The position numbers and the translations under genes are program-made. The notes under the pieces are model-generated. The model worked only from the letters and a program-made list of their open reading frames with translations. It was not told the origin of the DNA and made no database searches. This document shows positions 1 through 56,700 of a stretch of 64,000 nucleotides of DNA, one piece after another. The DNA lies in assembly GCF_011386835.1 (NCBI RefSeq), contig NC_088797.1:32488001-32552000 (forward strand). The letters run 5' to 3'. Numbering within the stretch: position 1 is the stretch's first letter; each line of letters begins with the position of its first letter. The DNA is from Chrysemys picta bellii. Taxonomy: Eukaryota.

Positions 1-1
1 G

Positions 2-361
2 AAGCCGTACACAGGCAGCCTGGACAGGAGTCAGGACCTGTTCAACTACAGGCTGAGCAAGTGCCGAATGGTGGTGGAATGTGCATTTGGACGTTTAAAA
101 GCGCGCTGGCGCAGCTTACTGACTCGCTCAGACCTCAGCGAAAAGAATATCCCCATTGTTATTGCTGCTTGCTGTGCGCTCCACAATATCTATGAGAGTA
201 AGGGGGAGACCTTTATGGCGGGGTGGGAGGTTGAGGCAACTCGCCTGGCCGCTGATTACGCGCAGCCAGACACCAGGGCGGTTAGAGGAGCACAGCAGGG
301 CGCGGTGCACATCAGAGAAGCTTTGAAAACGAGTTTTGTGACTGGCCAGGCTACTGTGTGA
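2..361 (+). CDS. Harbinger (HARBI1-like) DDE transposase, C-terminal part
   Basis: Frame from base 2 reads KPYTGSLDRSQDLFNYRLSKCRMVVECAFGRLKARWRSL...IAACCALHNIYE, the typical Harbinger transposase C-terminal motifs; no disruption up to the stop at 361. Confidence 0.92.
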   Translation, partial: KPYTGSLDRSQDLFNYRLSKCRMVVECAFGRLKARWRSLLTRSDLSEKNIPIVIAACCALHNIYESKGETFMAGWEVEATRLAADYAQPDTRAVRGAQQGAVHIREALKTSFVTGQATV

Positions 362-634
362 AACTTCTGTTTGTTTCTCCTTGATGAACCCTCCAAACTC
401 CCTCCCCCCCCCCCCCCCCCGACCCGGTTCACTCTACTTCCCTGTAAACCAACCACCCCACCCCACCCTCCCCTCCCTAATTCGAGCACCGCTTGCAGAG
501 GCAATAAAGTAATTGTTTTTTCACATTCATGCATTCTTTATTAGTTCCTCACAGAAGTAGGGGGATAATTGCCAAGGTAGCCTGGGATGGGTGGGGGAGG
601 AGGGATGAAAAAGGACACACTGCATTTTAAAACT

Positions 635-1417
635 TTAACTCTTATTGAAGGCCAGCCTTCTGATGCTTGGGCGATCATCTGCGGTGGAGTGACTGGGTGG
701 ACGGAGGCCCCCCCACCGTGTTCTTGGGCGTCTTGGTGAGGAGGCTATGGAACTTGGGGAGGAGGGCTGTTGGTTAAACAGGGGCTGTAGCGGCGGTCTC
801 TGCTCCTGCTGCCTTTCCTGCAGCTCAACCATACGCTCGAGCAGATCAGTTTGATGCTCCAGCAGACGGAGCATTGACTCTTGCCGTCTGTCTGCAAGCT
901 GACGCCACCTATCGTCTTCAGCCCGCCACTTGCTCTTTTCATCCCGCCATTCAGCCCGCCACCTCTCCTCTCGTTCATATTGTGCTTTTCTCATGTCCGA
1001 CATTGACTGCCTCCACGCATTCTGCTGTGCTCTATCAGCGTGGGAGGACATCTGCAGCTCCGTGAACATATCGTCCCTCGTCCTACGTTTTCTCTTTCTA
1101 ATGTTCACTAGCCTCTGCGAAGGAGAAACATTTGCAGCTGGTGGAGGAGAAGGGAGAGGTGGTTAAAAAAGACACATTTTAGAGAACAATGGGTACACTC
1201 TTTCATTACAAGGTCGCATATTTCGGCTTGCAGGCAGCCATGGTAGGCCACAGTGTTTTGGCTTTTTTAACCTTCTTAACATGCGGGAAAGGTTTCAAAC
1301 AGCAGCGCATTTCCCATATCAAGGATGAATTGCGTTGTCCATTTAAAATGGGTTTTCAATGTAAAAGGAGGGGCTGCAGTTTCCCGGTTAACATGTGGCA
1401 CAAACCCAAGTAAACCA

Positions 1418-1448
<31 letters not shown>

Positions 1449-2514
1449 ACATGATTCTCTGGGATGATCACTTCACCCTTCCCCTCCACCGCGTGGTTAA
1501 CAGCGGGGAACATTTCTGTTCAGAAGAGCAGGAACGGGCGCCTCTGAATGTCCCCTTAATAAAATCACCCCATTTCAACCAGGTGACCATGAATGATATC
1601 ACTCTCCTGAGGATAACAAAGAGAGATAAGGAATGGATATTGTCTGCATGCCAGCAAACACCGGGACCATACGCTGCCATGCTTTGTTATGCAATGATTC
1701 CAGACTACGTGCTACTGGCCTGGCGTGGTAAAGTGTCCTACCATGGCGGACGGGATAAGGCAGCCCTCCCCAGAAACCTTTTGCAAAGGCTTTGGGAGTA
1801 CATAAAGGAGAGCTTTCTGGAGATGTCCCTGGAGGATTTCCGCTCCATCCCCATACACGTTAACAGACTTTTCCAGTAGATGTACTGGCCGCGATTGCCA
1901 GGGCAAATTAATCATTAAACACGCTTGCTTTTAAACCATGTGTAATGTTTACAAATATTTACAAAGGTACAGTCACCAGAGGTCTCCTGTGTGCCCTGAG
2001 GGTCTTGGGTGAGTTCGGGGGTTACTGGTTCCAGGTCCAGGGTAACAAACATATCCTGGCTGTTGGGGAAACCGGTTTCTCCGCTTCCTTGCTGCTGTGA
2101 GCTACCTACAGTACCTCCATCCTCATCTTCCTCGTTCCCCGAACCGTCTTCCCTGTGTGTTTCTCCAGTGAGAGAGTCATAGCACACGGTTGGGGTAGTG
2201 GTGGCTGCACCCCCTAGGATCGCATGCAGCTCCGCGTAGAAGCGGCAAGTTTGCGGCTCTGCCCCGGACCTTCCGTTTGCTTCTCTGGCTTTGTGGTAAG
2301 CTTGCCGTAGCTCCTTAATTTTCACGCGGCACTGCCGTGTGTCCCTGTTATGGCCTCGGTCCTTCATGGCCTTGGAGACCTTTTCTAATACTTTGCCATT
2401 TCTTTTACTGCTACGGAGTTCAGCTAGCACTGATTCATCTCCCCATATGGCGAGCAGATCCCGTACCTCCTGTTCGGTCCATGCTGGAGCTCTTTTGCGA
2501 TCCTGGGACTCCAT
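635..2514 (-). CDS. Harbinger Myb/SANT-like (MADF/trihelix) DNA-binding protein, two exons: complement(join(635..1137,1977..2514)), ~346 aa
   Basis: Exon 1 MESQDRKRAPAWTEQEVRDLLAIWGDESVLAELRSSKRN...CRVKIKELRQAY (Myb/SANT-like). Phase-1 donor TCTG|GTGACT at 1977/1976 and acceptor CCACCAG|CTGCA at 1138/1137 join in frame to exon 2 (RKRKRRTRDDMF... coiled coil). No internal stops. Confidence 0.88.
1240..1879 (+). CDS. Third Harbinger gene, BEN-domain-like small protein: join(1240..1242,1583..1879), 99 aa
   Basis: GCCATG|GTAGGC donor at 1242/1243; acceptor CATTTCAACCAG|GTG at 1582/1583; ATTAAA at 1914-1919. Homologous gene with the same intron position in element B (36/98 identical, ungapped). 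BEN assignment is by visual motif match only. Confidence 0.75.
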
Positions 2515-3010
2515 CACGGTTACCTGTGCTGATGAGCTCTGCGTGGTCACCTGTGCTCTCCACGCTGAGCAAACAGGAAATGAAATTCAAACATTCGCGG
2601 GTCTTTTCCTGTCTACCTGGTCAGTGCATCTGAGTTGAAAGCGCTGTCCAGAGCGGTCACAATGAAGCACTGTGGGATAGCTCCCGGAGGCCAATAACGT
2701 CGAATTCCATCCACACTACCCCAATTCCGACCCGCAAAGGCCGGTTTTATCGCTAATCCCCTCGTCGGAGGTGGTGTAAAGAAACCAGTTTAAAGGACCC
2801 TTTAAGTCGAAAGAAAGGGCTTTGTCGTGTGGACGTGTCCAGGCTTAATTCGATTTAACGCTGCTAAAGTCGACCTAAACCCGTAGTGTAGACCAGGCCC
2901 AAGATTGGAGGGTCATTTTTCTGTGGTGCTGGGCACTGCACAGGCACCTACTGAGAGAGAATCCCTGTCCCAGAGAGCTCACAGGCTAAGTAGTCAAGCT
3001 TAGTGAGGGG

Positions 3011-4765: not shown

Positions 4766-7700
4766 GAAAATGCAAAGCTCTACACCAACCTCCTGGAGAT
4801 AGAGTTCAGCGCTGATGTCAGGCAGAATGAAGGCAACACCATGAACTGCTTTGAGAGAGCCCTGAGCAGTGGCCTCCCTGAGGAGACGAAGATTGTCTTC
4901 TCACAGCGCAGAGTGGAGTTCCTTGAGGACTTTGGGTCCAGCATACACAGGTAAGAGAACACCCTGTCTGCGTGGGGCTGTTTCTGAGACCCTCACCCCT
5001 TGAGTACAAAAAGTCAGATAATACAGTAACTCCTCGCTTAACGTTGTAGTTATGTTCTTGAAAAATGCGACTTTAAGCGAAACGATGTTAAGCAAATCCA
5101 ATTTCCCCATAAGAATGAATGTAAATAGGGGGATTAGGTTTCAGGGAAATGTTTTTCGCCAGACAAAAGACACATACGTATACAGTACAAGTTTTAAACG
5201 ATTTAATACTGTACTTATCAATGCTGACTTTGAGAAGCTTGGTTGAGGTGGTGAAGTCAGGGTGAAAGAGGGTAGATCGTCTGGCTGCTCCTCTTGCTGT
5301 TCTTTCCAAAGTACCAGGGGGTGTTCAACCCCAGGCCCTGCCCCCACTCCACCCTTGTCCTACTTTTCCTGCCCCTGCATACACACACCCCCGAGCGCAT
5401 CGCGTCTTGCTCCTTCCCCTTTCCCCCCCAGCCTCCTGAACGTCGCAAAACAGCTGATTGCTGCGGGCAGGAGGCGCGGGGGGAGGGAGGGAGTTGCTGA
5501 TCCGCGGGGCTGCCAGAGGGCGGGGGGGCAAGGAGGGGAGTTGATTGGGGGGCTGCCGGCCCACCCTGCTTCCAAGCCCCCACGGCCAAACAAGCAGACA
5601 TTACGCAACTTTAAATGAGTATGTTCTCTAATAGAGCAGTGATGTAACAGCATTAACCGGGGTGATGTTAAGTGAGGAGTTACTGTACCTAACTCTTGTA
5701 CAGTGCTTTTAATCAGTACAGCCCAAAGCTGGCAGGTATAATTATCCCCATTTTACATATGGGGAAACTGAGGCATAGACAGTGGAAGTGACTTGCCCAA
5801 GGTCACCCAAAAGGCCAGTGGTAGAGTTGGTAATAGAACCAAGGTCTCCTGCATCCCAGTCCAGAGTACTATCCACTAGGCCATGCTGCCCCCTGTCCCA
5901 GTGTCCACAGAGGGGAATGTTTTGGGGGTTCTCCTTCTCTGGTGTAAGGTACCTGATTGATGGCTCTAGAGAATTAAGCCCTCTATTCTTACACCCAGAA
6001 TCCTCTAGCCTGGAACTGACTTTGGGTTAATTGCATCCACAAACATCAGATCAGTCACTGTGTGGCTAACACCAGCCCCTTGCCCTTGAATTACCACTAG
6101 GGATCGTAGTTGAGACTTGATGGCCTAATCTTCCATCTTTCAAATCTGCCAACAAGGGAGACAATCATTCTTTCATAGGTTATAAAGCCATAAGGGACCA
6201 CCAGTAAATACCCATTTTGTTGGGGGTAAAGATTTGGCTCAAGTGGTTGGAGTTTAGCATGCCACTTCTATTCCCACCTCTGCTAGGGAGCACCAGGGGC
6301 CAAACGAAACTTGGGGCAAAACAAAGCACGTTCAAAGTTAGAGGGACAAAGCTTTCTCTTCTCACCAGTGCAAACTTTGGTAAAATCACTGAAACACACA
6401 CAGCAAATTCTCCTGTTCTTAACCATCTGTCCCCTTCTGTCTTCCCAGCTTGCTGACAGCGTATGATGAACACCAAAAGTTCCTCAAACACCAGATGACC
6501 AGGAAAAGAGCCCCTGAAAATGGGTAAGGCACAGATGCTACCCGATTTTAAACAGTCTCTCATACATTGGGAAGTGTCATGAATAGAGAGGAGGGTCAGA
6601 ATATTATATAGGAAGAACTAGATCGGGGTGGCCAAACTTACTGACCCTCCGAGCCAAATATGACAATCTTCAGAAGTTCGAGAGCCAGGGAATGCCTCTT
6701 GGGGCTTCAGCCCCGCTCTTGTTGAAGCGCCAAGCCCTGGCAAGTGCGCCCCACAGCACTGAAGCCCCAAGAACCCCTCCCCGCTGGGCAGAAACCAGAG
6801 ACGATGCTCCTCCCCGCAGCTCCCATCTGTTTGCTACTGCCTCTCCACGTGGAGCTAACACCTGGGACCTGCGGGGAGGGGTTGCTGAGAGTAAGGGGGG
6901 ACATGCCTTGGGTGTGTGACTCAAGCTGTTGCGGGAGGGGAGGAAGAACCTTTAAATTGTGCCCCCAAATCTCTGCAGGCACCAGTTATCTTTGGCAGAA
7001 GCCCCTAGCCCCACCACCCCGACGCAGGGTAGGAGCCCCGAGCTCTCCCCCCAGCCTGGTAGGTGGAGAATAGGGGGGGAAGTAGGGGGCTCATTGAGGC
7101 ACATTTTAACTGTAAAAGAGCCACGCGTGGCTCGCGAGGAACAGTTTGTCTAGTTCAGGGATGGCCAATCTTGAGGACTGGAGTAATAGAAATGGGATGA
7201 AATTTAATAGTACAAAGTACAAGGTTGTGAATTTAGAAACTAATAATTTCTGCTATAAGCTGGGTGCTCATCAATTGGCAATGAGGAGGAAAAGATGTCA
7301 GTGTATTAGTCAATCACAGAATTACTGAGAGCAACCAACGTGATGCAGCCATGTAAAGGGCAAATGCAATACCATCAGGTGAGAGATTTACAGTAGAGAT
7401 AGGGAAGTAATAATGTCATTGGACAAGGCACTTATAAGACCTCATCTGGAATACTGTGTACAAGCCTGATCACCTGTGTTCAAGAAAGATGAATCCAAAG
7501 TGGAATGTATGCAGAGAAGGGCTCCTAGGATGATGGGAATGAGAGCCAGTCTTATGAGCGGAGACTGAAAGAACTGGGCTTGTCTAACGTGGCAAAACGA
7601 AGGCTGAGAAGGGATCTGATGGCTCTCTATCAATACACTGGGAGATAGACCTCAGGGAGGAAGAAGAGCTGTCGAGGCTAAAGGACAATGATGGCACAAG

Positions 7701-14300: not shown

Positions 14301-15791
14301 CCCAGCCCTGCTGCAGTCCTCAGGAGAGTGGGGGCTGGGGTGGAGCAGGGCTGGGGCTTTGGGGAAAGTGCGGAGTTGGGGCAGGGCTGGGGTGGAAAGG
14401 GGCAGGGCTGGAGCAGCACACAGCTGCACAGGGCACCAGGAAATGTGGAGTCCCACACAGCTGCATACTTTGCATATGGGTAGGGACAGCCCTGCCCCTA
14501 CCCCAGGCCAGTGAAAATGAGTGAGGTTGGAGAAGAGCAAGCAAGGGGGGGGGCGGGGGTGATGATTCTGGGTTGCCCTTAAATTCAAAAAGTGATCTTG
14601 AGCATAAAAAGGTTGGAGATCACTCCTCTAGCTCAGGCCAAAGCTGGTCTTCCTCACAATAGCACCATCTTGGGCTCTTATCTCATTGGTGGGAGGAGCT
14701 AGTCAATGCAGAACTGGGATACAGGCACAGCATGCTAAATCAGCACTTAACAAAAACAAGGAGTCCAGTGGCACCGTAAAGACTAACAGATTTATTTGGG
14801 CATAAGCTTTTGTGGGGGGGAAAAAAACCCCACTTCTTCAGCTGCATGGAGTGAAAATTACAGATACAAGCATAAATATATATTGGCGCATGAAGAGAGT
14901 TACCTTACAAGTGGGGAACTTCCCTTCTCTTCATGTGCCAATATATATTTATGCTTGTATCTGTAATTTTCACTCCATGCAGCTGAAGAAGTGGGTTTTT
15001 TTCCCCCCCACAAAAGCTTATGCCCAAATAATTAGTCTTTACGGTGCCACTGGACTCCTCCTTGTTCTTGTGGATACAGACTAACACAGCTACCCCTCTG
15101 AAACTTGGCACTCAACAACAGTTGCTACAACTAGGCTTGGTAGAATTTGATTTTTGTTTTGATGGATAATGTTTTAAGCAGCTTTTTCAATTTAAATTTC
15201 CAGTTGTGAAAAATCATGGCTCTTAAGCATTTTGTTGATTTAAATATTCACAATTGTGGGAAGTTAGACATGTTGAATTGACCTTTACTGAGCCATGGAA
15301 TCCTTCCAAACCCAGCTCCAGGAGAGGGGCCCTATACTGTTACCTGATGGGGCTCTCCAGCCCGACGGGGTGGGGTACTCGGCGTGTTTGGGGGGAGCAG
15401 GAATTCTGGTGGGTGGAATGAGTCTCTCCACAAATTTATATTCTTCAGTGGATTCCACAATCCCGGGATAATGGGGGTGGTGGGTCTCAGGTTTGTCCCG
15501 GGACTGGCTCTGAAATGCAAGGGGGGAGGGTAAATAACCTTCAGGTGCTGTTCTCGTGCTATCCCGCCTGCGGGAGCCGAGCGCTGCCTGTCCCGCCCCA
15601 CGGCGGGCGCCGTTTCAGTGGGGCAGGAGAGCCACCCCCTAGCTGCGGGCGGGCGGTAAGGACGAACCGGCTACCTGAGCCCCCGTTACCGGTACCTGCC
15701 GGGCAGTCGCCTGCAGCAGCCGCCGGGCCCCCGCGCCCCACACGCCACCCGGCCGTCTCCTCAGCCCCGCTAAAGCTATGGCCGCCGCCAT
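11312..15791 (-). CDS. MRPL49: Mitochondrial ribosomal protein L49, 4 exons: 15791..15696, 15509..15344, 12746..12622, 11458..11312 (177 aa)
   Basis: [13 protein letters not shown]... presequence; [38 protein letters not shown]; [37 protein letters not shown]; [28 protein letters not shown]. Splice phases consistent; head-to-head with FAU as in mammals. Confidence 0.95.
11910..12442. mobile_element. hAT-type MITE
   Basis: TIR TAGGGCCCTACCAAATTC / GAATTGGTAGGACCCTA; 8-bp TSD GCTGTATT / GCTATATT. Confidence 0.8.
14754..15107. mobile_element. Penelope-like element pLTR fragment in inverted (palindromic) arrangement, MRPL49 intron 2
   Basis: Near-perfect inverted arms (~14757-14898 vs ~14922-15060); TSD GCACT(T/C)AACAA at 14743-53 and 15108-18; same family as the 3' end of the PLE at 40358..42066. 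Confidence 0.8.
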
Positions 15792-20090: not shown

Positions 20091-20682
20091 GCAGATGTCA
20101 CCTGAGCGTGCTGTCTTGTGGCTGCTTTCATTCCCAGAGTCCTGAAACCCAGGGGGCGGGGGGGCATTCTCTTCTCCCTCCCCTTGCATGTGAGCTGGCT
20201 CTGTTCAAGATGCCCTTGAGTCTCAGCCACTCTCAACCACTCCTGCCTGCCTGTGCTTCAGATTCCTCTGGGGGCACTTCAAGGGAGGGAACCAGCTGTG
20301 AGTGGCTGAGAAAGAGAGGTTGGGGAGGAGCTAGGTCCCAGACAACTGGGGTTGCCCTACCTGCTGTCTTCTGAGAGTTTACATACCACTGCATGTTCAC
20401 TGACGCCTCAGTGCATTCCATGTCCTGTAGGCAACCTGCATTACTGGCACTCCAAGCAGGAAGGGGAATGAGTGCTAGTTTTGTCTGCTCTGTGGGCTGA
20501 ATTCTGAACTCACTCTTTACAACAGTGCAGATTCTTTCTCCCAGTAGAAGTCTCCCCAGAGCTTCTCATTTTGGTGCCCAAAATCTAGGGGTGGAAAACC
20601 CTTCTGGAAGCTGTTGCTACAATGAGCAGGCAACTGTTTATCCTCTGCTTAAACAGATTAGTAGAAACAAAGAACAAAAAGA

Positions 20683-20919
20683 ACAAGGAGTCTGGTGGCA
20701 CCTTAAAGACGAACAGATTTATTTGGGCATAAGCTTTCGTGGGTAAAAACCTCCATGTGTCAGTATATAATGCCTGCATCTGTAACTTTCACTCTATGCA
20801 TCTGAAGAAGTGAGGTTTTTACCCAGGAAAGCTTATGCCCAAATAAATGTTAGTCTTTAAGGTGCCACCAGACTCCTTGTTGTTTTTGGAGATACAGACT
20901 AACACGGCTACCCCCTGAT
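20683..20919. mobile_element. Penelope-like pLTR palindromic insertion
   Basis: Inverted arms sharing GGCACCTTAAAGAC..ATTTATTTGGGCATAAGCTTTC; direct repeat AAAGAACAAAAAGA at 20669-82 and 20920-33. Confidence 0.78.
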
Positions 20920-21379
20920 AAAGAACAAAAAGATTGATCTAGTACTCTGAGCTGCATTGAGAACCTGGGTAGCTCAGTCCTGTTCCCCACTTCATGATTG
21001 AGGCCTTGGCTACACTTGCGAGTTACAGCACTGTAAAGGCTCCCCCAGCGCTGTAACTCACTCCCCGTCCACACTGGCAAGGCATTTGCAGCGCTGCATA
21101 TACTCCACCTCTCCGAGAGGAATAACAAGTGCAGCTCTGCCGCTGCAGCACCAGTGTGGCCGGCCACTGCTCTGTGAATGGCCTTCAGAATTATTCAGCA
21201 GTATCCCACAATGCCTGTTCTAGCCACTCTGGTCATCAGTTCAAACTCTACTGCCCTGGCCTCAGGTAACCAACCATGTGACTGACCCTTTACATTCCCT
21301 GGGAATTTTAAAAATCCCCTTCCTGTTTGCTCAGCCTGGCGTGGTGTGGAGTGCTATCAGCGAATCTTTCCAGGTGACC

Positions 21380-23140
21380 ATGCCTCCAAGCGAGCCCCAG
21401 CATGGAGCAATGGCGAGTTGCTGGACCTAAACAGTGTTTGCGGGGAGGAAGCTGTCCAGTCCCAGCTGCGCTCCAGACGTAGGAATTACGATACCTTCGG
21501 GAAGGTTATCAAAGGACATGTTGGAAAAGTGCCGTGACCGGGATGCCCTGCAGTACAGGATTAAAGTGAAGGAGCTGCGGAGTACCTACTGCAAAGCCCG
21601 CGACGCAAACGGCCGCTCGGGTGCACCCCCGTGACCTACCGATTCTACAAAGAGCTGGATGCGATACTTGGGGTTAACCCCACCTCCACTCCGAGCACCA
21701 CCATGGACACTTCAGAGTCGGGGGGGGGGGGGGGAGGGGGAGAGGAGGAAAACGGGAGTGATGGTGGTGTGCCAGATGGAGACATCCCAGGAGCTCTTCT
21801 CGAGCCAGATGGAAGGTAGCCAGTCGCAGCGGCCGGTACTTGGTAGAGGACAAACGGAAGAGCAGGTTCCCGGTAAGTGTGTTTTTTTTTGTTTGTTTGT
21901 TTTTTTCGGGAAGGAATTTTTTCAGTGCGGGCTCTTTGGGAGAGGAGGGTTAGGCATGCATGCCTAGATGCGGAATAGTGCATTGATGTGGTTCATCACA
22001 TCGTAATAATCGGCCTTGGTAATCTCCTCAAATGTCTCATCCAGAACGTGTGCAATGCGCTTGCGCAGGTTTATCGGGAGAACCACCATGGTCCTTGTCC
22101 CAGCCAGGCTAACGTGTCCGTGCCACTGTGCCACGAGGGGTGGGGGGACCATTGTTGCACACAGGCAAGCTGCATGGGGGCCAGGACAGAAGCCGTATTG
22201 CAGTAGAAGACCCTCCCTTGCTTCCCAGGTCACCCTCAGCAGCGAGATATCTTCCAGGACAAAGTCCTGTGGAAAATGTTGGAACAGTGTTTCAGTGTAG
22301 GTGCCCCCTGAAGCTGTTGGCTCTCCCCAAGGCACAGAAACCCAGAGGACAGTGCAGCCCTGAAACAATCAGTCCCTCTTACTCACCATTTTGAGGCTCC
22401 CATGGGATGTGTGTGCTCTGTTTTGGACGGGAAAATTATGCTATGTGTAGACCCTGTGTGTTTTCTACTCCTCAAGTGCGGGGGGGAATCATTACTCTGT
22501 CTGGTATAAACAATGCTGCCTCTGTTAAATGTTGCATTTTGCCTATACAGCTGCATCAAGCTTGAGACCTCAGCCATCCCTCTTATCGCCTGCTCAGAGA
22601 CTGCAAAGACTCAGGAAGAGACCGCGAAAAAGCAAAGAAGACATGCTGTGGCAATCTATTAAAGAGAATGAGAGAGCACAGGACTGGAGGGAGAGAGAAA
22701 GCAGGATCTGCCAGGAAAATGCAGCGCACCGGTGGCAAAGCACTGATAGGCTCATAAGCATCCTGGAGCACCAAGCAGACGCTATCCAGGAGCTGGCAGC
22801 CACGCAGAAAGAGGAGCAGTACCGCAAACGCCACCCCCACCCCCAAGCCCTTGTCCCAAAACTTTCCATTGTGCCCCACTGTCACCTCCAACCCACTTTC
22901 CCCAACTTCTGTGTTCTTCATGCCACCTGCTGCCTCCAACACCACTATCTTCACCATCCAGCCCTGAAAACCACGACCCTTACCCTCTGCACTCAACTGC
23001 CATCACCATGCCGTATAGCTATCCTGAAGTGCAGCACTCACTGCACAGCACACCACACAGGACATACGCGGATCTGTGATTGTACTGTTCCCCACTCCAC
23101 CCCCTTGTTTCTTTTCAATAAATGGATTCTTTGGCTTTGA
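21380..23140 (+). pseudogene. Harbinger B Myb/SANT-like gene, frameshifted; exon 1 21380..21872, exon 2 from 22551
   Basis: KRAPAWSNGELLDL..., QYRIKVKELRSTYCKA, RFYKELDAILG in shifting frames; donor CG|GTAAGT and acceptor TATACAG|CTGCA match element A; exon 2 RLQRLRKRPRKSKEDM. Confidence 0.85.
21964..22389 (-). CDS. Third Harbinger gene (BEN-domain-like) of element B: complement(join(21964..22266,22387..22389)), 101 aa
   Basis: AAAATG|GTGAGTAAG donor at 22387/22386; acceptor TTTTCCACAG|GAC at 22267/22266; open frame DFVLEDISLLRVT...PGPHAACLCATMVP...HINALFRI*, homologous to 1583..1879. Confidence 0.75.
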
Positions 23141-23276
23141 AAACATTCTTTATTATTGCATAAAGTAAAAGACTCCTTAGCCCAGGAAATAAACAGGCAC
23201 TGCAAGTCTGCTTAGCAAACACTGATTCCTAAAGATTGGAACTACTGCACTTCACTCCCGTGCAGGGCACCAGATA

Positions 23277-24522
23277 TCACTGCTGGTTTTCAGCCTCAAA
23301 TTGCTCCTTCAAGGCATCCCTAATCCTTACAGGGGGCCAGCGCGGGGCTGCAATAGGCCTGCTCTCTGGCTGTGCAAATTCAGCCTCCAGGTGTTGAACC
23401 TCGGAGGTCCATGCCTGAGTGAAGCTTTCACCCTTCCCTTCACAATATTATGGAGGGCACAGCACACGGATATAACCACAGGGATGCTGTTTTTGGCCAA
23501 ATCCAGCTTCCCATACAGAGATTGCCAGCGGCCCTTTAAACAGCCAAAAGCACACTCCACAGTCATTCAGCACCAGCTCAGCCTGTAGTTGAACTGTTCC
23601 TTGCTGCTGTCAAGGCTCCCTGTGTAGGGTTTCATGAGCCACAGCATTAACGGGTAAGTGGGATGTCCAAGGATCACAATAGGCATTTCAACTTCCCCTA
23701 CCATGATCTTCCGCTCTGGGAAAAAAGTCCCGGCCTGCATCTTCCTGAACAGCCAAGTGTTCTGAAAGATGCGTCCGTCATGCACCTTTCCGGGCCAGCC
23801 TGAGTTAATGTCAATTAAACGCCCATGGTGATCCACAAGTGCCTGGAGAACCATAGAGAAATACCCCTTCCGATTAACGTACTCGGATCCTAGGTGTGGT
23901 GGTGCCAGAATAGGAATGTGTGTCCCATCTATTGCCCCTCCACAGTTGGGGAACCCCATTTATGCAAAGCCATCCACTATTTCCTGCACGTTACCCAGAG
24001 TCATGGTTCTTCTGAGTAGGATGCGATTAATGGCCTTGCAAACTTGCATCAACGCGATTCCAACGGTCGACTTTCCCACTCCAAACTGGTTTGCGACTGA
24101 CTGGTAGCTGTCTGGAGTTGCCAGCTTCCAGATTGCAATAGCCACCTGCTTCTCCACTGGCAGGGCAGCTCTCAATCTCGTGTCCATGCGCCGCAGGGTG
24201 GGGGCAAGCTCCTCACACAGTCCCATGAAAGTGGCTTTTCTCATCCGAAAGTTCTGCAGCCACTGCTCGTCATCCCAGACTTCCATGACGATGTGATCCC
24301 ACCACTCGGTGCTTGTTTCCCGAAACAAAAGCGGCATTCCCCGGTGCTGAGCATGTCCGTGAATGCCACAAGCAATTTCGTGTCATACGCATTATGCGGC
24401 TCGATAGCATTGTCGGACTCCTCACTCTCACTGTCACTTTGGATCTTAAGGAATAGTTCAACAGCCAAACGTGACGTTCTGGCGAGACTCGTCAGCATAC
24501 GCCTCAGCAGTTCGGATTCCAT
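23277..24522 (-). pseudogene. Harbinger B transposase, disrupted
   Basis: Fragments WLQNFRMRKATF, GFPNCGGAIDGTHIPI (first catalytic D), GWPGKVHD, VECAFGCLKGRW, separated by frameshifts and stops. Confidence 0.92.
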
Positions 24523-25429
24523 TTCCCGCAGACAGATCGCGCTGCACAGAAACCGTTGAAAGATGGCGCCAAAGGTGGATGGAAACAAAGGGATTTCTGG
24601 GATGCGAAGCGATGCATCACGGGGGATTGGGACAGGACCCAGAATCCCCCGCACCCACGCCCACAACCCACGGCACCAGAATGGGAAGAGGTGCTCTGTG
24701 GGATAGCTGCCCATGATGCACTGCTCCCAATAGTGCTGCAATCGCTGCAAATGTGGCCACGACAGTGCGCTGGGCAGCGGTCTGTGTGGACAGACTGCAG
24801 TGCTTTCCCTATTCAGCTGCACGAAGTCAGGTTTAACTCACAGCGCTGTACATCTGCAAGTGTAGCCAAGGCCTTAGATTAAAGAGTGGAAGACATGAGC
24901 AGGGCTTTAGTGCTGCTCACTTCATATAGCTGAAATCTGTCGGTCTCTGCGCCAGTTTCTTTGTCTGTAATGTGGTGATGATACTTCTAAGGCAGTTATG
25001 GCTGAATGAGTCAATATTTGAGAAGTGCTGGGACATCCTTGCATGGAAGGCCCAAGTGTTATTTCCACCTGGCTTTACAGTGATGACTCGGTGTGTGAGG
25101 CAGGACTGTGCTGCTGCTTTGTTGTTACTGCACCTTTGAGGGTGTAGTGCTGGATCTGTAATTGTAGGAAGAAGCAAGATGCTTTTTAAGAGGAAATGTA
25201 CAGACTCTCCTGGGGCTCCATTCTGCAAGAACCCAAAGCAATTTCGGTGCAGCTGCCTTGGGGGTGGAGCAGGCTCATTTTTTAACAGATAGGGTAGTGC
25301 CCGAGTGGGAGGGGGTGATCAATGCAGGGATTATTCAGATATGGGTGCCAGCTTTGTAAAGGCAGGGGCGGCCACGCTGCCACAGACTTCGCATACCTTG
25401 GAACTGCGCGACCCTTATGCAGTGGTCGC

Positions 25430-25624
25430 CGGAAATAGCCGAAAGGGTGTGGAGTTCCGAAACTGAAGATGCGAAACGCCCGAGAGTTTCCGAATCTAAG
25501 GCGGAGTTACCCGAAGTTGTACGAGCGCTTCCGGCGCGAAGGCGGAAATAGCCGAACCAAACAGCTGCTGTGGCGGAAGGCGGAAATGCCCGAGTGGTGG
25601 CGGAAAGACCCGATCGCTGCCAAG
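25430..25624 (+). promoter_or_regulatory. ZNHIT2 CpG promoter with repeated CGGA-N5-CCGA motifs
   Basis: Five copies at 25430, 25502, 25543, 25581 and 25601, most with an ETS-like CGGAAA core. Confidence 0.6.
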
Positions 25625-26887
25625 ATGGAGGCGGCCGAGCCCTGCGGCCTGTGCCTGCAGGAGCGGGCCCCCTACACATGCCCCCGCTGTAACATGCGTT
25701 TCTGTTCGGTGCCGTGTTACCGGCGTCACGGGGCCTGCGCCGAGGCTTTCCACCGCCGGCAGCTGCTGCTCCGGCTCCAGGGCCAGCGGGGGGACCCGGC
25801 CTCCCGAACCCGCCTGAAAGAGGCGCTGCTCCGGCTGCGGGAGCTACGCGAGCTCGAGGACGCGGAGCCCCAGCTAGGCCGCGACCTGGAGGACCAGGAC
25901 GACGGTCTGTGGGAGCGGCTCAGTCCGGCCGAAAAGGCCGCCTTTCAGCGCCTGCTGAGCAGCGGGGAGATTGGAACCTTCCTGCCCCCCTGGAGGCCCT
26001 GGTGGCGGGGATGGGGCCGGGGGCTGGTCCAGGAGCTGGCGGGTACTGAGGGTGCCCAGGAAGCTGGGGATACCCAGCCCCCTGCAGGCACCCAGAAGCC
26101 AGAGAAGAAGATCCCAGACTCAGCACCTATCCACCAGCCACCGGTACCCCAAGGTTCTTACCCCCCCACGGGCACCCGGCAGCCAGAGGAGAGCTCAGGC
26201 ATGGCACCCACCCAGCAGCCTGAAGAAATGCCCAGCCCAGTGCCTGCTGTGCCTGCATCCATTCCACCACTGAGCTCCCTGACCTGCAGCCCAGCCTCAC
26301 CCCTGGTGTGCTTCCAGCTGCCTAATGTCCTCTATGCCTACGTCTTCGCCCTCACCCTCTACAATGGGGACTTGAGTGAAGATGAGCTGCTGCCTGAGTT
26401 CTCTGACATGGTCCTGGGTGTCTGCGGGGCATTGGGTGCCAGGCAGGTCTTCCACTCCACAGCAGAGGCGCTGCAGGCTGCTCTCCAGGCAGTGACAGCC
26501 AGACGGTACCCCGCGTGCCCCTTGGGGAATGCAGGTGCTATGATGGCAGTGGCCCAGATCCTGATGGGGGAGAATCAAAGCAAGCAGAAAGGCTACAGCT
26601 TGGCAGCCCTCTCCCATCTTGCCAGGCTGCTGGGCAAGGCTAAGAAACTGGTGCCCACAGAGGAACGGCCCAGGGTGTATGGTGCCAAGAAGAAGTGTGA
26701 ATTTCTGCTCTCCTGGGTCAATGAGAACCAGGAATCTTTGACTGTCTTGGCCCTAGAGGTACAAAGGGAATATAAAACCCATTTGGAGGCAGTCAAAGAG
26801 GTGGATGTAGTTACCAAAGAACTGCAGAAGATGTGGGGTGGGAAACTGCCCCCTGCAAAAAAGCCATTGATCGAGGAGTTGGACTGA
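25625..26887 (+). CDS. ZNHIT2: Zinc finger HIT-type containing 2, single exon (open frame extends upstream to an ATG at 25469)
   Basis: zf-HIT CGLC...YTCPRCNMRFCSVPCYRRHGAC; SPLVCFQLPNVLYAY; AKKKCEFLLSW; C-terminal KKPLIEELD*; intronless and next to FAU as in human; AATAAA at 27079. Confidence 0.95.
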   Translation: MEAAEPCGLCLQERAPYTCPRCNMRFCSVPCYRRHGACAEAFHRRQLLLRLQGQRGDPASRTRLKEALLRLRELRELEDAEPQLGRDLEDQDDGLWERLSPAEKAAFQRLLSSGEIGTFLPPWRPWWRGWGRGLVQELAGTEGAQEAGDTQPPAGTQKPEKKIPDSAPIHQPPVPQGSYPPTGTRQPEESSGMAPTQQPEEMPSPVPAVPASIPPLSSLTCSPASPLVCFQLPNVLYAYVFALTLYNGDLSEDELLPEFSDMVLGVCGALGARQVFHSTAEALQAALQAVTARRYPACPLGNAGAMMAVAQILMGENQSKQKGYSLAALSHLARLLGKAKKLVPTEERPRVYGAKKKCEFLLSWVNENQESLTVLALEVQREYKTHLEAVKEVDVVTKELQKMWGGKLPPAKKPLIEELD

Positions 26888-31961: not shown

Positions 31962-32340
31962 TAGCCGAGTTCAAGTGAGAGTAACTCCAGTGTACTCATT
32001 TGAGCTAACTGTTGCAGTGAAGACAAACCCTCCATCTCATCATGACCCATGCATCTGTCGGGCAGACCTTTCTGCTGTGGGCTTGCACCTCCTTACAGCA
32101 GCAGAGGAGAATTCAGGCACGCTCCATTCTCAGATGTCCAGGGTGAAGCCTGCAATGAGCTTGCAGCCAACTGTAGTGGTTGCGATCTTGTTAGACTCTT
32201 TCGTTAAAGCATTACCAATCATGCAGTAAGCTCCATTGTGGTCCCTCATGGAAGGCAATGCTTTAAGCTCGAGTGACGCACAGAGGAATGCAGCTCAGAC
32301 ATCTATTGCTGATATGAAAACATTGTGGGTTTTGTTATAC

Positions 32341-33055
32341 ACAAGAATGGCCATACTGAGTCAGACCAGAGGTCCATCTAGCCCAGTATTCTGTCTTCCA
32401 ACAGTGGCCAATGCCAAGTGCCCCAGAGGGAATAAACAGAACTGGTAATCATCAAATGATCAATCCCCTGTCGCCCATTCCCAGCTTCTGGCAAAGAGAG
32501 GCTAGGGACACCGTCCCTGGCCATCCTGGCTAATAGCCATTAATGGACCTATCCTCCAGGAACTTACCTAGTTCTTTTTTGAACCTGTTACAGTGTTACC
32601 TTTCACAACATCTTCTGTCAAGGAGTTCCACAGGTTGACTGTGTTGTGTGGAAAAAATACTTCCTTTTGTTTGTTTTAAACCTGCTGCCTATTAATTTCA
32701 TTTAGTGACCCCTAGTTCGTGTGTTATGAGAAGGAATAAATAACACTTCCTTATTCACTTTCTCCACACAAGTCATGATTTTATAGACCTCTATCATATC
32801 CCCCTTCGTGGGCTCTTTTCCAAGCTGAAAAGTCCCAGTTTTATTAATCTCTGCTCACATGGCAGCCATTCCATACCCTTAATCATTTTTGTTGCCTTTT
32901 CTGAACCTTTTCCAATTCCTATCTATCTTTTTTGAGATGAGGTGACCGCATCTGCACACAATATTCAAGAGGTGGATGTACCATGGATTTATCTAGAGGC
33001 AATATGATATTTCTTGTCTTATTATCTATCCCTTTCTTAATGATTCCCAACATTC
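32341..33055 (-). mobile_element. CR1 LINE 3' fragment
   Basis: Minus strand encodes [13 protein letters not shown]...HPPLEYCVQMRSPHLKKD (CR1 RT C-terminus); same family as 53742..57310. Confidence 0.88.
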
Positions 33056-33388
33056 TGCACCCCAAACCCCTCATCCCCAGCTCCACCCCAGAACCTGAAC
33101 CCCCGGCCGGAGCCCTCACCCCGTGTCCCAATTCCCTGCCCCAGCCTGGAGTCCCCTCCCACACTCCAAATCTCTCTGTCCCAACCTGAAACACCCTCCT
33201 ACACTCCAAACCCCTCATCCCCAGCCCCACCCCAGAGCCCGCACCTCCATCTGGAGCCCTCTGGGGATGACAACGTGCCCCAGTGGGGAGGACAGAGGCT
33301 AGCGCCCTGCCAGCCTATGGAGCAGTGGTGGGCAGATGTGAGCTGTCATGCCTGGGTCTGCATGGGGCATGGTGTGCTGGGCCACATC

Positions 33389-45105
<11,717 letters not shown>

Positions 45106-45320: not shown

Positions 45321-45695
45321 GGCCATGTCTATACTACACAATTATGTCTACCTAACTTACATCTGCATAAGCCACCACAGGTATTAAATCACTTGTGTCG
45401 GCAGTATGCGTCCTCACCAGGACGCGTGTATCGATCGTACTGTCAGTGAGGAGCATTGTGGGACGGCTCCTGAAAGCCAGTCACAATCAATGAAAGCAAT
45501 GCAGGGTCCGCACGGACACTGCATCAATCTAATTACATCGACCTTGGCTCTCCACCGCTTGGGGAGGTGGTGTTACTAAAGCGCCGCAGAGAGGAACTTA
45601 CGTCAGTGGGAGCCAAACGTAAATGAAGAGATTTCCACAGCTAGGTCGACGCAAAGCATCTTACATCAACCTAACAGTGTAGTGTAGACCAGGCC
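45321..45695. mobile_element. Harbinger-type MITE
   Basis: Termini GGCCATGTCTATACTAC / GTAGTGTAGACCAGGCC; 3-bp TSD TAT; right end identical to that of Harbinger A. Confidence 0.85.
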
Positions 45696-53741: not shown

Positions 53742-56700
53742 TTTAAGAACATAAGAACATAAGAATGGCTTTACTGGGTCAGACCAAAGGTCCATCTAGC
53801 CCAGAATCCTGTCTTCCGACAGTGGCCAATGCCAGGTGCCCCAGAAGGAATGAACAGAAACTCATCAAGCTCTGTCCCCTGTCGCTCATTCCCAGCTTCT
53901 GGCAAACTGAAGCTAGAGACACCATTCCTGTCCATCCTGGCTAATAGCCATTGATGGACCTATCCTCCATGAATCTATCTAATTCTTTTTTGAACCCTGT
54001 TATGGTCTTGGCCTTCACAACATCCTCTGGTAAGGAGTTCCACAGGTTGACTATGCGTTGTGTGAAGAAATACTTGCTTTTATTTGTTTTAAACCTGCTG
54101 CCTATTAATTTAATTTGGCGACCCCTAGTTCTTTTGTTATGAGAAGTAGTAAACAACACTTCCTTATCTACTTTCTCTACACCAGTCATGACTGTATAGA
54201 CCTCAATCATATCTCCCCTTAGACATCTCTTTTCCAAGCTGAAAAGTCCCAGTCTTATTAATCTCTCCTCATACGGAAGCCATTCCATACCCCTGATAAT
54301 TTTTTTTGCCCTTTTCTGAACCTTTTCCAATTCCAATATATCTTTTTTGAGATGGCACGACCACATCTGCACACAGTATTCAAGATGTGGGCGTACAATG
54401 GATTTATATAGAGGCAACATGATATTTTCTGTCCTATTATCTATCCCTTTCTTAATTATTCCCAGCATTCTGTTCGCTTTTTTGACTGCCGCTGCACATT
54501 GAGTGGATGTTTTCAGAGAACTATCCACAATGACTCCAAGATCTCATTCTTGAGTGGTAACAGCTAATTTAGACCCCATCATTTTATATGTATAGTTGGG
54601 ATTATGCTTTCCAATGTGCATTACCTTTGCATTTATCAACATTAAATTTCATCTGCCATTTTGTTGCCCAGTCACCCAGTTTTGAGAGATCCTTTTGTAG
54701 CTCTTCATAGTCTGCCTGGGTCTTAACTATCTTTAGTAATTTTGTATCATCTGCAAATTTTGCCATCTCACTGTTTACCCCTTTTTCCAGATCATTTATG
54801 AATATGTTGAATAGGACTGGTCCAAGTACCTACCCCTGGGGGACACCACTATTTACCTCTCTCCATTCTGAAAACTGATCATTTATACCTTCCCTTTGTT
54901 TCCTATCTTTTAACCAGCTAACAATCCATGAATGCACCTTCCCTCTTATCCCATGGCAGCTTACTTTGAATAAGAGCTTTTGGTGAGGGACCTTGTCAAA
55001 GGCTTTCTGAAAATCTAAGTACACTATATCCACTGGATTCCCTTGGTCCACATGCTTGTTGACCCCCTCAAAGAATTCTAGTAGATTGGTGAGGCATGAT
55101 TTCCCTTTACTAAAACCATAATTTGTTGACTCTTCCTCAACAAATTATGTTCATCTATATGTCTGACAATATTGTTCTTTATTATAGTTTCAACCAGTTT
55201 GCCTGGTACTGAAGTCCGTTTTACAGGCCTGTAATTGCCGGGATTACCTCTGGAGCCCTTTTTAAAAATTGGCGTCACATTAGCTATCCTCCAGTCATCT
55301 GGTACAGAAGCTGATTTAAATGATAGGTTACATACTACAGTTAGTAGTTCTGCAATTTCACATTTGAGTTCCTTCAGAACTCTTGGGTGAATACCATCTG
55401 ATCCTGGTGACTTATTGCTGTTTAATTTATCAATTTGTTCCAAAACCTCCTCTAATGATACCTCAATCTGGGACAATTCCTCAGATCTGTCACCTAAAAA
55501 GAATGGCTCAGGCTCGGGAATTTCCCTCACATCCTCAACCATGAAGACCGATGCAGAGAATTCATTTAGTTTCTCTGCAATGGCCTTATTGTCCCTTATT
55601 GTCTCCTTTAGCACCTCGATCGTCCAGTGACCCCACTGGCTGTTTAGCAGGCTTCTTGCTTCTGATGTACTTAATTGCTATTACTTTTTGAGTCTTTGGC
55701 TAGCTGTTCCTCAAATTCTTTTTTGGCCTTCCTAATTGTATTTTTACACTTCATTTGTCAGTGTTTATGCTCCTTTCTATTTTCCTCACTAGGATTTAAC
55801 TTCTACTTTTTAAAGGATGCCTTTTTGCCTCTCACTGATTCTTTTACTTTGTTGTTTAGCCACGGTGGCTCTTTTTTGGTTCTCTATGTTTTTTTATTTG
55901 GGGTATACATTTAAGTTGAGCCGCTAGTATGGTGTCTTTAAAAAGTTTCCACGCAGCTTGCAGAGATTTCACTTTTGGTGCTGTACCTTTTAATTTCTGT
56001 TTAACTAACCTCCTCATTTTTGTGTAGTTCCCCTTTCTGAAATGAAATGCTACTGTGTTGGGCTGCTGTGGTGGATATTACATTTAATTATATTATGGTC
56101 AATATTACCAAGCGGTCCAGCTATATTCACCTCTTGGACCAGATCCTGTGCTCCACTTAGGACTAAATCAAGAATTGCCTCTCCTCTGGTGGGTTCCAGG
56201 ACCAGCTGCTCCAAGAAGCAGTCATTTAAGGTGTCAAGAAACTTTATCTCTGCATCCCGTCCTGAAGTGACATGTACCCAGTCAATATGGGGATAATTTA
56301 AATCCCGCATTATTATTATTGAGTTTTTTATTTTAATAGCCTCTCTAATCTCCCTGAGCATTTCACAGTCACTATCACCGTCCTGGTCAGGTGGTTGGTA
56401 ATATATCCCTACCGCTATATTCTTATTATTAGAGCATGGAATTTCTATCCATAGAGATTCTATGGTACAGTTTGATTAATTTACGATTTTTACTTCATTT
56501 GATTCTACGTTTTCTTTCACATATAGTGCCACTCCCCCACCAGCACGACCTATTCTGTCCTTCCGATATATTTTGTACCCTGGTATTACTGACTTCAGAG
56601 TAACAGCCGTGTTAGTCTGTATCCGCAAAAAGAAGAACAGGAGTACTTGTGGCACCTTAGAGACTAACAAATTTATTAGAGCATAAGCTTTCGTGGACTA

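What the first reader, a model, noticed from the sequence alone, without database searches (positions are those of the whole stretch)
21964..22389. Second, divergent copy of the BEN-like nested gene is intact in an otherwise decayed Harbinger
Seen: in element B the transposase (23277..24522) and the Myb gene both carry frameshifts or stops. The nested gene keeps a consensus donor (AAAATG|GTGAGTAAG), a 120-nt intron, a good acceptor and an open 100-codon exon. Independent replication in a family with a different TIR (GGCCTTGGCTACAC vs GGCCTGGTCTACAC) shows the third gene is older than the split of the two families. Inference: its intactness could reflect selection on this copy (incipient domestication), but a 300-nt ORF can survive by chance.
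Basis: partly seen in the sequence, partly recalled or inferred. Interest (0 to 1): 0.8.

Follow-up and report, generated by a model that had tools for sequence, protein, structure and literature searches.

The report
Neutral relic of Harbinger's third gene
The open 100-codon reading frame is a real, spliced third gene of turtle Harbinger transposons that encodes a BEN-fold domain, but this copy is a young insertion decaying neutrally, and its intactness is chance rather than the start of domestication.

Summary
Element B (21002-24873) is a Harbinger with a broken DDE transposase and a broken Myb gene. Antisense in the Myb intron lies a two-exon gene. Its start codon (22389-22387) ends exon 1. 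A GTGAGT donor and a 120-nt intron follow, then an open 100-codon exon (22266-21964).

The donor, the acceptor and a downstream AATAAA are conserved in independent family-B copies from Chelonia. The family-A protein is 37% identical without gaps. The gene is therefore older than the split of the two families.

The protein has a BEN fold: pLDDT 96, Z 12.4 against BEND3 BEN4. Its nearest named relative is the C-terminal domain of the Xenopus germ-plasm protein Pat. No window copy matches Pfam BEN.

Selection on this copy is not supported:
- The insertion is present in Trachemys. Emys, Chelonoidis and Eretmochelys have a clean TTA empty site.
- Window versus Trachemys, the exon differs at 13 sites, 11 of them nonsynonymous. 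That is 4.3%, the same rate as the whole element.
- The AATAAA is lost in both species.
- The broken transposase itself keeps open stretches of 125 and 130 codons.

First readers of this scan noted the same gene on other pieces of this genome. No RNA evidence was obtained.

The parts
21002..24873 (.). Harbinger element B (family with TIR GGCCTTGGCTACAC), a lineage-specific insertion between FAU and ZNHIT2
   Evidence: Identical 14-nt TIRs at both ends. DDE_Tnp_4 match. Collinear with Trachemys L009; clean empty site in Emys, Chelonoidis and Eretmochelys.
20999..21001 (.). Left copy of the target-site duplication. It reads TGA, mutated from TTA; the right copy, TTA, is at 24874-24876.
   Evidence: The empty sites of Emys, Chelonoidis and Eretmochelys carry a single TTA here.
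22387..22389 (-). Start codon that forms the last three bases of exon 1 of the third gene (context CAAAATG|GTGAGTAAG). The 5' limit of exon 1 is not known.
   Evidence: Read directly. The motif is identical in the window copy, the Trachemys ortholog and three Chelonia copies.
22267..22386 (-). 120-nt GT-AG intron of the third gene
   Evidence: Donor GTGAGTAAG and acceptor TTTTCCACAG are conserved in all family-B copies read. The window copy carries a private 12-nt deletion and a 1-nt insertion inside it.
21964..22266 (-). Exon 2 of the third gene: 100 codons plus TAG, encoding a single BEN-fold domain
   Evidence: Translation. AF2 model pLDDT 96.1. Z 12.4 to BEND3 BEN4. TM 0.91 to Xenopus Pat residues 186-282.
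21900..21905 (-). Position of the family's AATAAA polyadenylation signal, lost in this copy (it reads AAAAAA inside an expanded A/C-rich run)
   Evidence: Three Chelonia copies have AATAAA 65 nt after the stop. Window and Trachemys have no AATAAA or ATTAAA after the stop.
23277..24522 (-). Transposase pseudogene (DDE_Tnp_4)
   Evidence: Two frameshifts: near 24327, shared with Trachemys, and near 23446, private. Two private stops: 23962-23960 and 23566-23564. Pfam E 2e-17.
21391..21875 (+). Myb/SANT-like gene, exon 1, broken
   Evidence: The frame changes near 21506, 21632 and 21750 when tracked against the intact Myb of element A.
22551..23080 (+). Myb/SANT-like gene, exon 2, broken. The intron between the two exons (21876-22550) holds the third gene on the other strand.
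   Evidence: The N-terminal and C-terminal parts of the exon lie in different frames.
1..2899 (.). Harbinger element A (TIR GGCCTGGTCTACAC), cut by the window start and lying in the opposite orientation
   Evidence: TIR at 2886-2899. DDE_Tnp_4 C-terminus and Myb_DNA-bind_4.
1583..1879 (+). Exon 2 of the third gene in element A (acceptor TTTCAACCAG|GTGACCATG). A possible ATG-ending first exon lies at 1240-1242 (GCAGCCATG|GTAGGC).
   Evidence: The Malaclemys Gnomon model LOC128826488 X2 splices exactly into this acceptor.

Best explanation
The region 21964-22389 (minus strand) is a copy of a third gene carried by turtle Harbinger transposons. The gene has two exons. Exon 1 ends with the start codon. 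A short GT-AG intron follows. A single 100-codon exon then encodes a small protein that consists of one BEN-fold domain. In intact family members the exon is followed by AATAAA. The whole gene sits antisense inside the intron of the element's Myb/SANT gene.

The gene was kept by purifying selection in the active transposon lineages: families A and B, at least one more turtle family, and relatives in geckos, amphibians, fish and coelacanth.

By inference from the BEN fold, the protein is a nucleic-acid or chromatin-binding accessory factor of the transposon. It would most likely regulate transposition or transcription of the element.

This particular copy is a neutral relic. It inserted at a TTA site between FAU and ZNHIT2, in the emydid lineage that includes Trachemys, after that lineage split from Emys. 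Since then it has decayed at the same rate as the rest of the element. Its reading frame is still open by chance.
For: Gene anatomy:
- The ATG-ending exon, donor GTGAGTAAG, acceptor and AATAAA are conserved in independent family-B copies.
- The acceptor is conserved in family A and is used by a Gnomon model.

Coding constraint between families:
- 37% identity, no gaps, E 1e-23.
- 111 profile hits, with W, G, P and N nearly invariant.

Fold:
- pLDDT 96.1.
- All chains with Z of 5 or more are BEN domains. The best is BEND3 BEN4: Z 12.4, rmsd 2.0 A, 88 residues aligned.
- AFDB clusters return BEN-domain proteins.
- An Atlas cluster in which 33% of members carry Pfam BEN matches at TM 0.86.
- Weak Pfam BEN hits occur in 15 of 58 relatives.

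Neutrality of this copy:
- The insertion is present in Trachemys. The site is empty, with a single TTA, in Emys, Chelonoidis and Eretmochelys.
- Exon 2 differs from Trachemys at 13 of 303 sites, 11 nonsynonymous and 2 synonymous. The chance of 11 or more is 0.28 under neutrality, 0.004 at omega 0.3 and 0.04 at omega 0.5.
- Divergence is 4.3% in the exon, 4.2% in the element and 2.1% in the flanks.
- The window copy has changed the conserved Tyr of PGPY to His.
- The polyA signal is lost.
- There are at least 8 disabling lesions in 2257 nt of the other two genes. That predicts about 1.1 in 306 nt, so the chance of none is about 0.33.
- 16.5% of the 303-nt windows in the transposase are free of lesions.
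- No annotated turtle protein is more than 80% identical to this ORF.
Against: - No RNA evidence was obtained. The single read-laying run was swamped by paralogous copies. Splicing of this copy, and a transcription start for the gene, are therefore inferred, not shown.
- The ORF, the ATG and both splice sites are open in both species that carry the insertion. That is what weak selection would also give.
- Thirteen substitutions give limited power. Omega near 0.7-1 cannot be told from 1.
- The DNA-binding role is inferred from fold only. The nearest named relative, Xenopus Pat, is described as a cytoplasmic germ-plasm protein (PMC3827131).
Confidence: 0.85

Rival explanations
1. Incipient domestication: the host keeps this copy's BEN-like ORF under selection while the transposase and the Myb gene decay.
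For: The ORF, the ATG, the donor and the acceptor are intact in both the window species and Trachemys. The transposase and the Myb gene carry at least 8 lesions. The copy lies about 750 bp upstream of the ZNHIT2 start codon, near a promoter.
Against: - 11 of 13 substitutions since the split from Trachemys change the amino acid. Omega of 0.3 or less is rejected at P 0.004.
- The exon diverges as fast as the rest of the element and twice as fast as the flanks.
- The family's AATAAA is lost.
- Both TIRs are still intact.
- The insertion is absent from Emys, Chelonoidis and Eretmochelys.
- No annotated ortholog exists in any turtle proteome searched.
- The chance of survival is about 0.3.
Confidence: 0.04
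2. The exon is not an independent gene. It is an alternative 3' exon of the transposase transcript, or of any read-through transcript. The natural product would then be an N-terminal piece of the transposase fused to the BEN-like domain.
For: - It lies on the same strand as the transposase and downstream of it.
- Its acceptor is in phase 0.
- Chelonia gene models join the transposase N-terminus to it: P0006 on the full-length element L003, and also P0004 and P0015.
- Gnomon isoforms of host genes (TEDC1 X5, PFKFB4 X4/X7, Malaclemys LOC128826488 X2) splice into the same acceptor.
Against: - An ATG-ending first exon with a Kozak-like context and a consensus donor lies 120-133 nt upstream. It is conserved in the window copy, its Trachemys ortholog and three Chelonia copies.
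- A similar GCAGCCATG|GTAAGC lies upstream in family A.
- Family A keeps an in-exon ATG at codon 3.
- The transposase has its own stop, and an AATAAA follows it.
- The Chelonia models may be purely ab initio.
Confidence: 0.12
3. The nested ORF is a host gene fragment (a Pat-like or BEN-like exon) that an ancestral Harbinger picked up. It rides along without any function for the transposon.
For: The same domain ends many non-transposon gene models in fish, amphibians and coelacanth, including Xenopus Pat.
Against: - Protein-level conservation persists across at least three Harbinger families whose DNA is otherwise unalignable.
- The position, the strand, the splice phase and the polyA signal are all conserved. 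A passenger without function would not keep these.
- Many of the host models are alternative C-terminal isoforms, which look like exon capture from the transposon rather than its source.
Confidence: 0.1

Closest known systems
Xenopus laevis Protein Pat (Xpat, UniProt O73622), C-terminal domain, and the 'protein Pat-like' paralogs
   Same: It is the best match outside the turtle family. TM is 0.91, rmsd 1.3 A and identity 26% over residues 186-282. Pat-like proteins are hit by the sequence profile at E 7e-7. The motif W..VN.DGSRGK.ALP.NL is shared, and the domain is C-terminal in both.
   Different: Pat is a 293-aa host protein of germ plasm particles (PMC3827131). It is not known to be part of a transposon. 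It has a long N-terminal part, which the 101-aa Harbinger protein lacks. It also keeps the basic tail (LR.PRK) that the turtle copies lack.
BEN domains of BEND3 (BEN4, PDB 7W27/7V9I; BEN3, 7V9H), BANP (7YUG/7YUK) and BEND6 (7YUL)
   Same: The fold is the same, five helices with a loop and hairpin. Z is 12.4, 11.1, 9.3 and 8.0, with 84-91 residues aligned at 2.0-3.0 A. Foldseek probability is 0.99 and TM 0.71.
   Different: Identity is only 11-16%. No window copy matches Pfam BEN at E up to 10. A profile of 58 relatives finds no BEN chain in the PDB by sequence. Those BEN domains are shown to bind specific DNA; nothing of the kind is shown here.
Canonical PIF/Harbinger elements (e.g. Harbinger3_DR) and their domesticated pair HARBI1/NAIF1
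   Same: DDE_Tnp_4 transposase, Myb/SANT-like second gene, short TIRs and a 3-bp TWA target duplication.
   Different: Surveys describe two ORFs only (PMC4482050; nothing on a third ORF in PMC9179366). Here a third, spliced gene lies antisense in the Myb intron.

Membership tests
PIF/Harbinger DNA transposon | DDE transposase of the DDE_Tnp_4 type | tested here: met
   PF13359 E 2.1e-17 on the B fragment 23570-23959 and E 2.9e-12 on the A C-terminus.
PIF/Harbinger DNA transposon | Second gene with a Myb/SANT-like DNA-binding domain | tested here: met
   PF13837 E 9e-19 on element A exon 1. B exon 1 aligns to it through frameshifts.
PIF/Harbinger DNA transposon | Terminal inverted repeats and a 3-bp TWA target-site duplication | tested here: met
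   Identical 14-nt TIRs. A single TTA stands at the empty site in three species, and TGA/TTA flank the element.
BEN domain (Pfam PF10523) | Sequence match to the Pfam model at its gathering score | tested here: not met
   The window copies give no hit at E up to 10. 15 of 58 relatives give sub-threshold hits, best E 0.0026 on the domain alone. On a full-length relative the best hit is 20.8 bits against a cut-off of 23.2.
BEN domain (Pfam PF10523) | BEN fold | tested here: met
   Z 12.4, rmsd 2.0 A and 88 residues aligned to BEND3 BEN4; every chain with Z of 5 or more is a BEN domain. BEN proteins dominate the AFDB cluster hits. An Atlas BEN cluster matches at TM 0.86.
BEN domain (Pfam PF10523) | Sequence-specific DNA binding | not testable with these tools
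The nearest named relative, Pat, is described as cytoplasmic (PMC3827131).
Domesticated transposon gene | Purifying selection on the orthologous copy (dN/dS below 1) | tested here: not met
   11 nonsynonymous against 2 synonymous differences from Trachemys. Omega of 0.3 or less is rejected at P 0.004.
Domesticated transposon gene | Slower evolution than the neighbouring neutral sequence | tested here: not met
   Exon 4.3%, element 4.2%, flanks 2.1%.
Domesticated transposon gene | Retention at the orthologous locus over a wide range of species | tested here: not met
   Present only in the window species and Trachemys. Emys, Chelonoidis and Eretmochelys have the empty site.
Domesticated transposon gene | Expression of this copy as a spliced mRNA | tested here: inconclusive
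   Read laying was swamped by paralogs, and no joint at 22387^22266 could be read. No holder of the stretch is on record as RNA.

The most novel reading that the evidence does not exclude
Vertebrate Harbingers include a three-gene clade. Its third gene ends in a self-contained terminal exon with a strong phase-0 acceptor, a BEN-fold ORF and a polyA signal. This exon works as a natural gene trap. It has repeatedly been spliced onto host transcripts (TEDC1, PFKFB4 and GTPBP1 isoforms in turtles; HNRNPUL1, ATF7IP and PYRIN-domain fusions in fish and frogs). It is also the evolutionary source of host proteins such as the Xenopus germ-plasm protein Pat.
Probability: 0.3. Interest if true: 0.75.

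Novelty: new variant of a known kind. Interest (0 to 1): 0.45.

Why it matters
- For this locus, the result closes a question. The open frame is not a gene in the making, so it should not be annotated as one.
- For the family, it gives the first tool-based support that some vertebrate Harbingers carry three genes, not two. It defines the anatomy of the third gene: an ATG-ending exon, a short intron, a 100-codon exon and AATAAA.
- It assigns the protein a BEN fold and links it to Xenopus Pat, whose C-terminal domain had no family in what I read.
- It shows that the exon is picked up by host transcripts as an alternative C-terminus. This is a route by which a transposon could spread a chromatin- or DNA-binding domain through host proteomes.
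- The full-text searches run here found no paper describing a third Harbinger gene. Repbase entries could not be checked.

Tried and rejected
- **Pfam on the window ORFs:** no BEN, only noise.
- **First AF2 model:** built on a 10-sequence alignment, pLDDT 57, unusable. It was replaced by the 58-sequence model.
- **Profile search of PDB sequences:** only spurious TFIIA-gamma matches at E 0.09.
- **The protein-atlas search by features:** no usable hit.
- **Read laying at 90% likeness on 20700-25200 with two presumed RNA and two DNA runs:** tens of thousands of paralogous contigs were laid. The joints shown all lie in the hairpin repeat at 20.7-20.9 kb. Nothing could be read about 22387^22266. 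The call did reveal window-private differences that later checks confirmed. The depth peaks over 21908-22209 in run X25 were not used, because contig depth is not a measure of expression.
- **Lesion tally in the Chelonia copies L001, L003 and L004:** rejected as biased, because these copies were found through their intact nested ORF.
- **Four-way alignment for the Myb exons:** unreliable. Two copies lack data and the frame was mis-set. It was replaced by frame tracking against the intact Myb of element A.
- **Logan contigs L005 and L006:** hoped to be cDNA, but they are collinear with genomic DNA. Their 'M' starts come from a prokaryote-style gene caller.
- **Look-ups of the Latimeria and Danio homologs for Harbinger neighbours:** not on record.

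Full report
**1. What is at the coordinates**

Element B runs from 21002 to 24873. It has identical 14-nt TIRs (GGCCTTGGCTACAC) at both ends. The second family's TIR (GGCCTGGTCTACAC) occurs at 2886-2899 and 45682-45695.

The minus strand reads CAAAATG|GTGAGTAAG, with the ATG at 22389-22387. The intron is 22386-22267 (120 nt). The acceptor is TTTTCCACAG|, so exon 2 starts at 22266. Exon 2 has 100 sense codons and a TAG at 21966-21964.

Fragments of the minus-strand transposase match DDE_Tnp_4 (E 2e-17). Element A's plus-orientation partner gene matches Myb_DNA-bind_4 (E 9e-19).

**2. State of the other two genes**

I projected the transposase onto the frame shared with three Chelonia mydas copies and the Trachemys ortholog. 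It has four lesions:
- a 1-nt deletion near 24327;
- a 1-nt deletion near 23446;
- an in-frame stop at 23962-23960;
- an in-frame stop at 23566-23564.

Myb exon 1 changes frame near 21506, 21632 and 21750 when tracked against the intact Myb of element A. The two ends of exon 2 lie in different frames. That makes at least 8 disabling lesions in 2257 nt.

**3. The nested ORF is a real gene of the transposon family**

The A copy (1583-1879, + strand) and the B copy give proteins that are 37% identical over 97 residues, without a gap, E 1e-23. The DNA of the two elements is alignable only over 110 nt of the transposase.

For comparison, the transposase C-termini are 63% and 42% identical in two segments. 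The Myb exons are 29-56% identical. The third protein has therefore diverged about as much as Myb.

In family B the following are conserved in the window copy, its Trachemys ortholog and three independent Chelonia copies:
- the ATG-ending first exon (CCCAAAATG|GTGAGTAAG);
- the 120-133 nt intron;
- the acceptor.

The three Chelonia copies also carry AATAAA 65 nt after the stop.

In family A the acceptor TTTCAACCAG|GTGACCATG is conserved in three copies. A GCAGCCATG|GTAGGC (GTAAGC in Malaclemys) lies about 340 nt upstream in two of them. A third family (L006) has CCCACAG|GTGACC at the same place, and AATAAA after the stop.

**4. The acceptor is used**

The Gnomon model Malaclemys LOC128826488 X2 joins an exon 4.2 kb upstream, outside the element, exactly to this acceptor. 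Protein models of TEDC1 isoform X5 (Chrysemys), PFKFB4 isoforms (Trachemys, Chrysemys) and others end in this exon, always from its first codon. An Atlas cluster named GTPBP1 isoform X4 matches the model at TM 0.92. Chelonia models also join the transposase N-terminus to the exon, on a full-length element. This keeps alive the rival that the exon can serve as an alternative 3' exon.

**5. What the protein is**

An exhaustive profile search found 111 relatives, 43 of them at E of 1e-10 or better. They come from turtles, geckos, Xenopus and Bombina, teleosts and Latimeria. They share the motif PDI.L...YA..LF...VP...Y..W...VN.DGSRGK.ALP.NL...I......F......D...I...INE.LR.PRK.

The window copies do not match Pfam BEN. 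Fifteen of 58 relatives do so weakly, and no other family recurs.

With the 58-sequence alignment the window-B protein folds at pLDDT 96.1. The structural matches are:
- VIA-align: all 13 chains with Z of 5 or more are BEN domains. The best is BEND3 BEN4, at Z 12.4, 2.0 A and 88 residues.
- Foldseek on the PDB: probability 0.99 and TM 0.71 for the same chain.
- AFDB clusters: mostly BEN-domain proteins after the family's own members.
- Swiss-Prot models: the best match is Xenopus Protein Pat, residues 186-282, at TM 0.91 and E 5e-7.

I therefore call it a divergent BEN-fold domain of the Pat C-terminal family. I do not call it a Pfam-BEN member.

**6. Is this copy under selection?**

I used the neighbouring ZNHIT2 gene to fetch the orthologous interval from four turtles.

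- Trachemys scripta is collinear over the whole 6.5 kb and carries the element.
- Emys orbicularis, Chelonoidis abingdonii and Eretmochelys imbricata have an uninterrupted site with a single TTA. In the window, TGA and TTA flank the element.

The insertion therefore postdates the split of the window lineage from Emys. The window's own ZNHIT2 model is the masked 472-aa member of the same cluster as the Trachemys model. By inference, the window is from a deirochelyine emydid.

Between the window and Trachemys, divergence is as follows:

| Region | Divergence |
|---|---|
| Flanks | 2.1-2.2% |
| Whole element | 4.2% |
| Nested exon 2 | 4.3% (13 of 303 sites) |

The element's excess over the flanks is largely CpG transitions, 62 of 162 differences.

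Of the 13 differences in the exon, 11 are nonsynonymous and 2 synonymous. Six arose on the window branch and six on the Trachemys branch. Under neutrality, with 73% nonsynonymous sites, the chance of 11 or more is 0.28. At omega 0.5 it is 0.04, and at omega 0.3 it is 0.004.

The window branch changed the conserved Tyr of PGPY to His. Both species lack the AATAAA.

Since the split from Trachemys, the window's transposase gained three lesions and the Trachemys transposase gained one. The element is therefore decaying in place.

With at least 8 lesions in 2257 nt, about 1.1 are expected in 306 nt, so the chance of none is about 0.33. 16.5% of the 303-nt windows in the transposase are free of lesions. 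The transposase keeps ORFs of 125 and 130 codons. No annotated turtle protein is closer than 80% to this ORF.

**7. Mechanism: shown and inferred**

Shown:
- the gene anatomy;
- protein conservation across families;
- the BEN fold;
- use of the acceptor in gene models;
- neutral evolution of this copy.

Inferred:
- The protein binds DNA or chromatin and regulates the element. This rests on fold alone. It is weakened by the cytoplasmic germ-plasm location reported for Pat (PMC3827131).
- The gene has its own promoter in the Myb intron.

**8. Literature and earlier notes**

Surveys of PIF/Harbinger describe two ORFs (PMC4482050; PMC9179366). Full-text searches for Harbinger with BEN or with a third ORF found nothing relevant.

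First readers of this scan noted the same nested gene on other pieces of this genome, and at 1240-1919 of this window. None of these notes was followed up.

**9. Verdict**

The antiquity of the third gene is supported, and the BEN-like call is supported at the level of fold. Copy-specific selection is not supported. This copy is an ordinary decaying insertion of an unusual three-gene Harbinger.

Noticed in passing
window 21002-24873 compared with L009 (Trachemys): The element diverges twice as fast as its flanks (4.2% against 2.1%). 62 of the 162 differences are CpG transitions, as expected for a methylated transposon. The non-CpG rate is also somewhat higher (2.6% against 1.85%).
   Followed up: partly
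window 20676-20914 (also 14749-15096, 41992-42056, 56630-57162): A hairpin-like repeat family (AACAAGGAGTC.GGTGGCACCTTAAAGAC...). The copy at 20.7-20.9 kb is present in Trachemys and Emys but absent at this site in Chelonoidis and Eretmochelys. It also produced most of the spurious joints in read laying.
   Followed up: partly
L007 (Chelonoidis) 5201-5945, opposite window ~20372: Chelonoidis has its own insertion of about 740 bp in the FAU-ZNHIT2 interval. It starts with a sequence 80% identical to the left end of element B, probably a Harbinger-derived MITE.
   Followed up: no
window 39364-39377 and 45682-45695: Further matches to the Harbinger TIR: one exact family-A TIR and one with a single mismatch. 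They suggest more Harbinger-related elements or MITEs in the window.
   Followed up: no
window 25469-26887: The intronless ZNHIT2 ORF is open from 25469, and the 472-aa model is used for this genome and for Trachemys. The start conserved in other turtles is at or near 25625, giving 420-433 aa. The longer model may be an annotation artefact.
   Followed up: partly
P0018, P0028, P0114-P0117, P0027, P0126 (proteins): The Harbinger BEN-like exon appears as an alternative C-terminal exon in predicted isoforms of host genes: TEDC1, PFKFB4 and a glycine-transporter-like gene in turtles, and a KDM4B-like gene in gecko.
   Followed up: partly
window 1-2899 (element A): In contrast to B, element A has open reading frames for Myb exon 1 (211 aa), Myb exon 2 (157 aa), the part of the transposase in the window, and the third gene. 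It looks younger or better preserved.
   Followed up: partly
window 32339-33057 and 53757-54472: Two copies of another repeat of about 700 bp, 77-89% identical, 21.4 kb apart.
   Followed up: no
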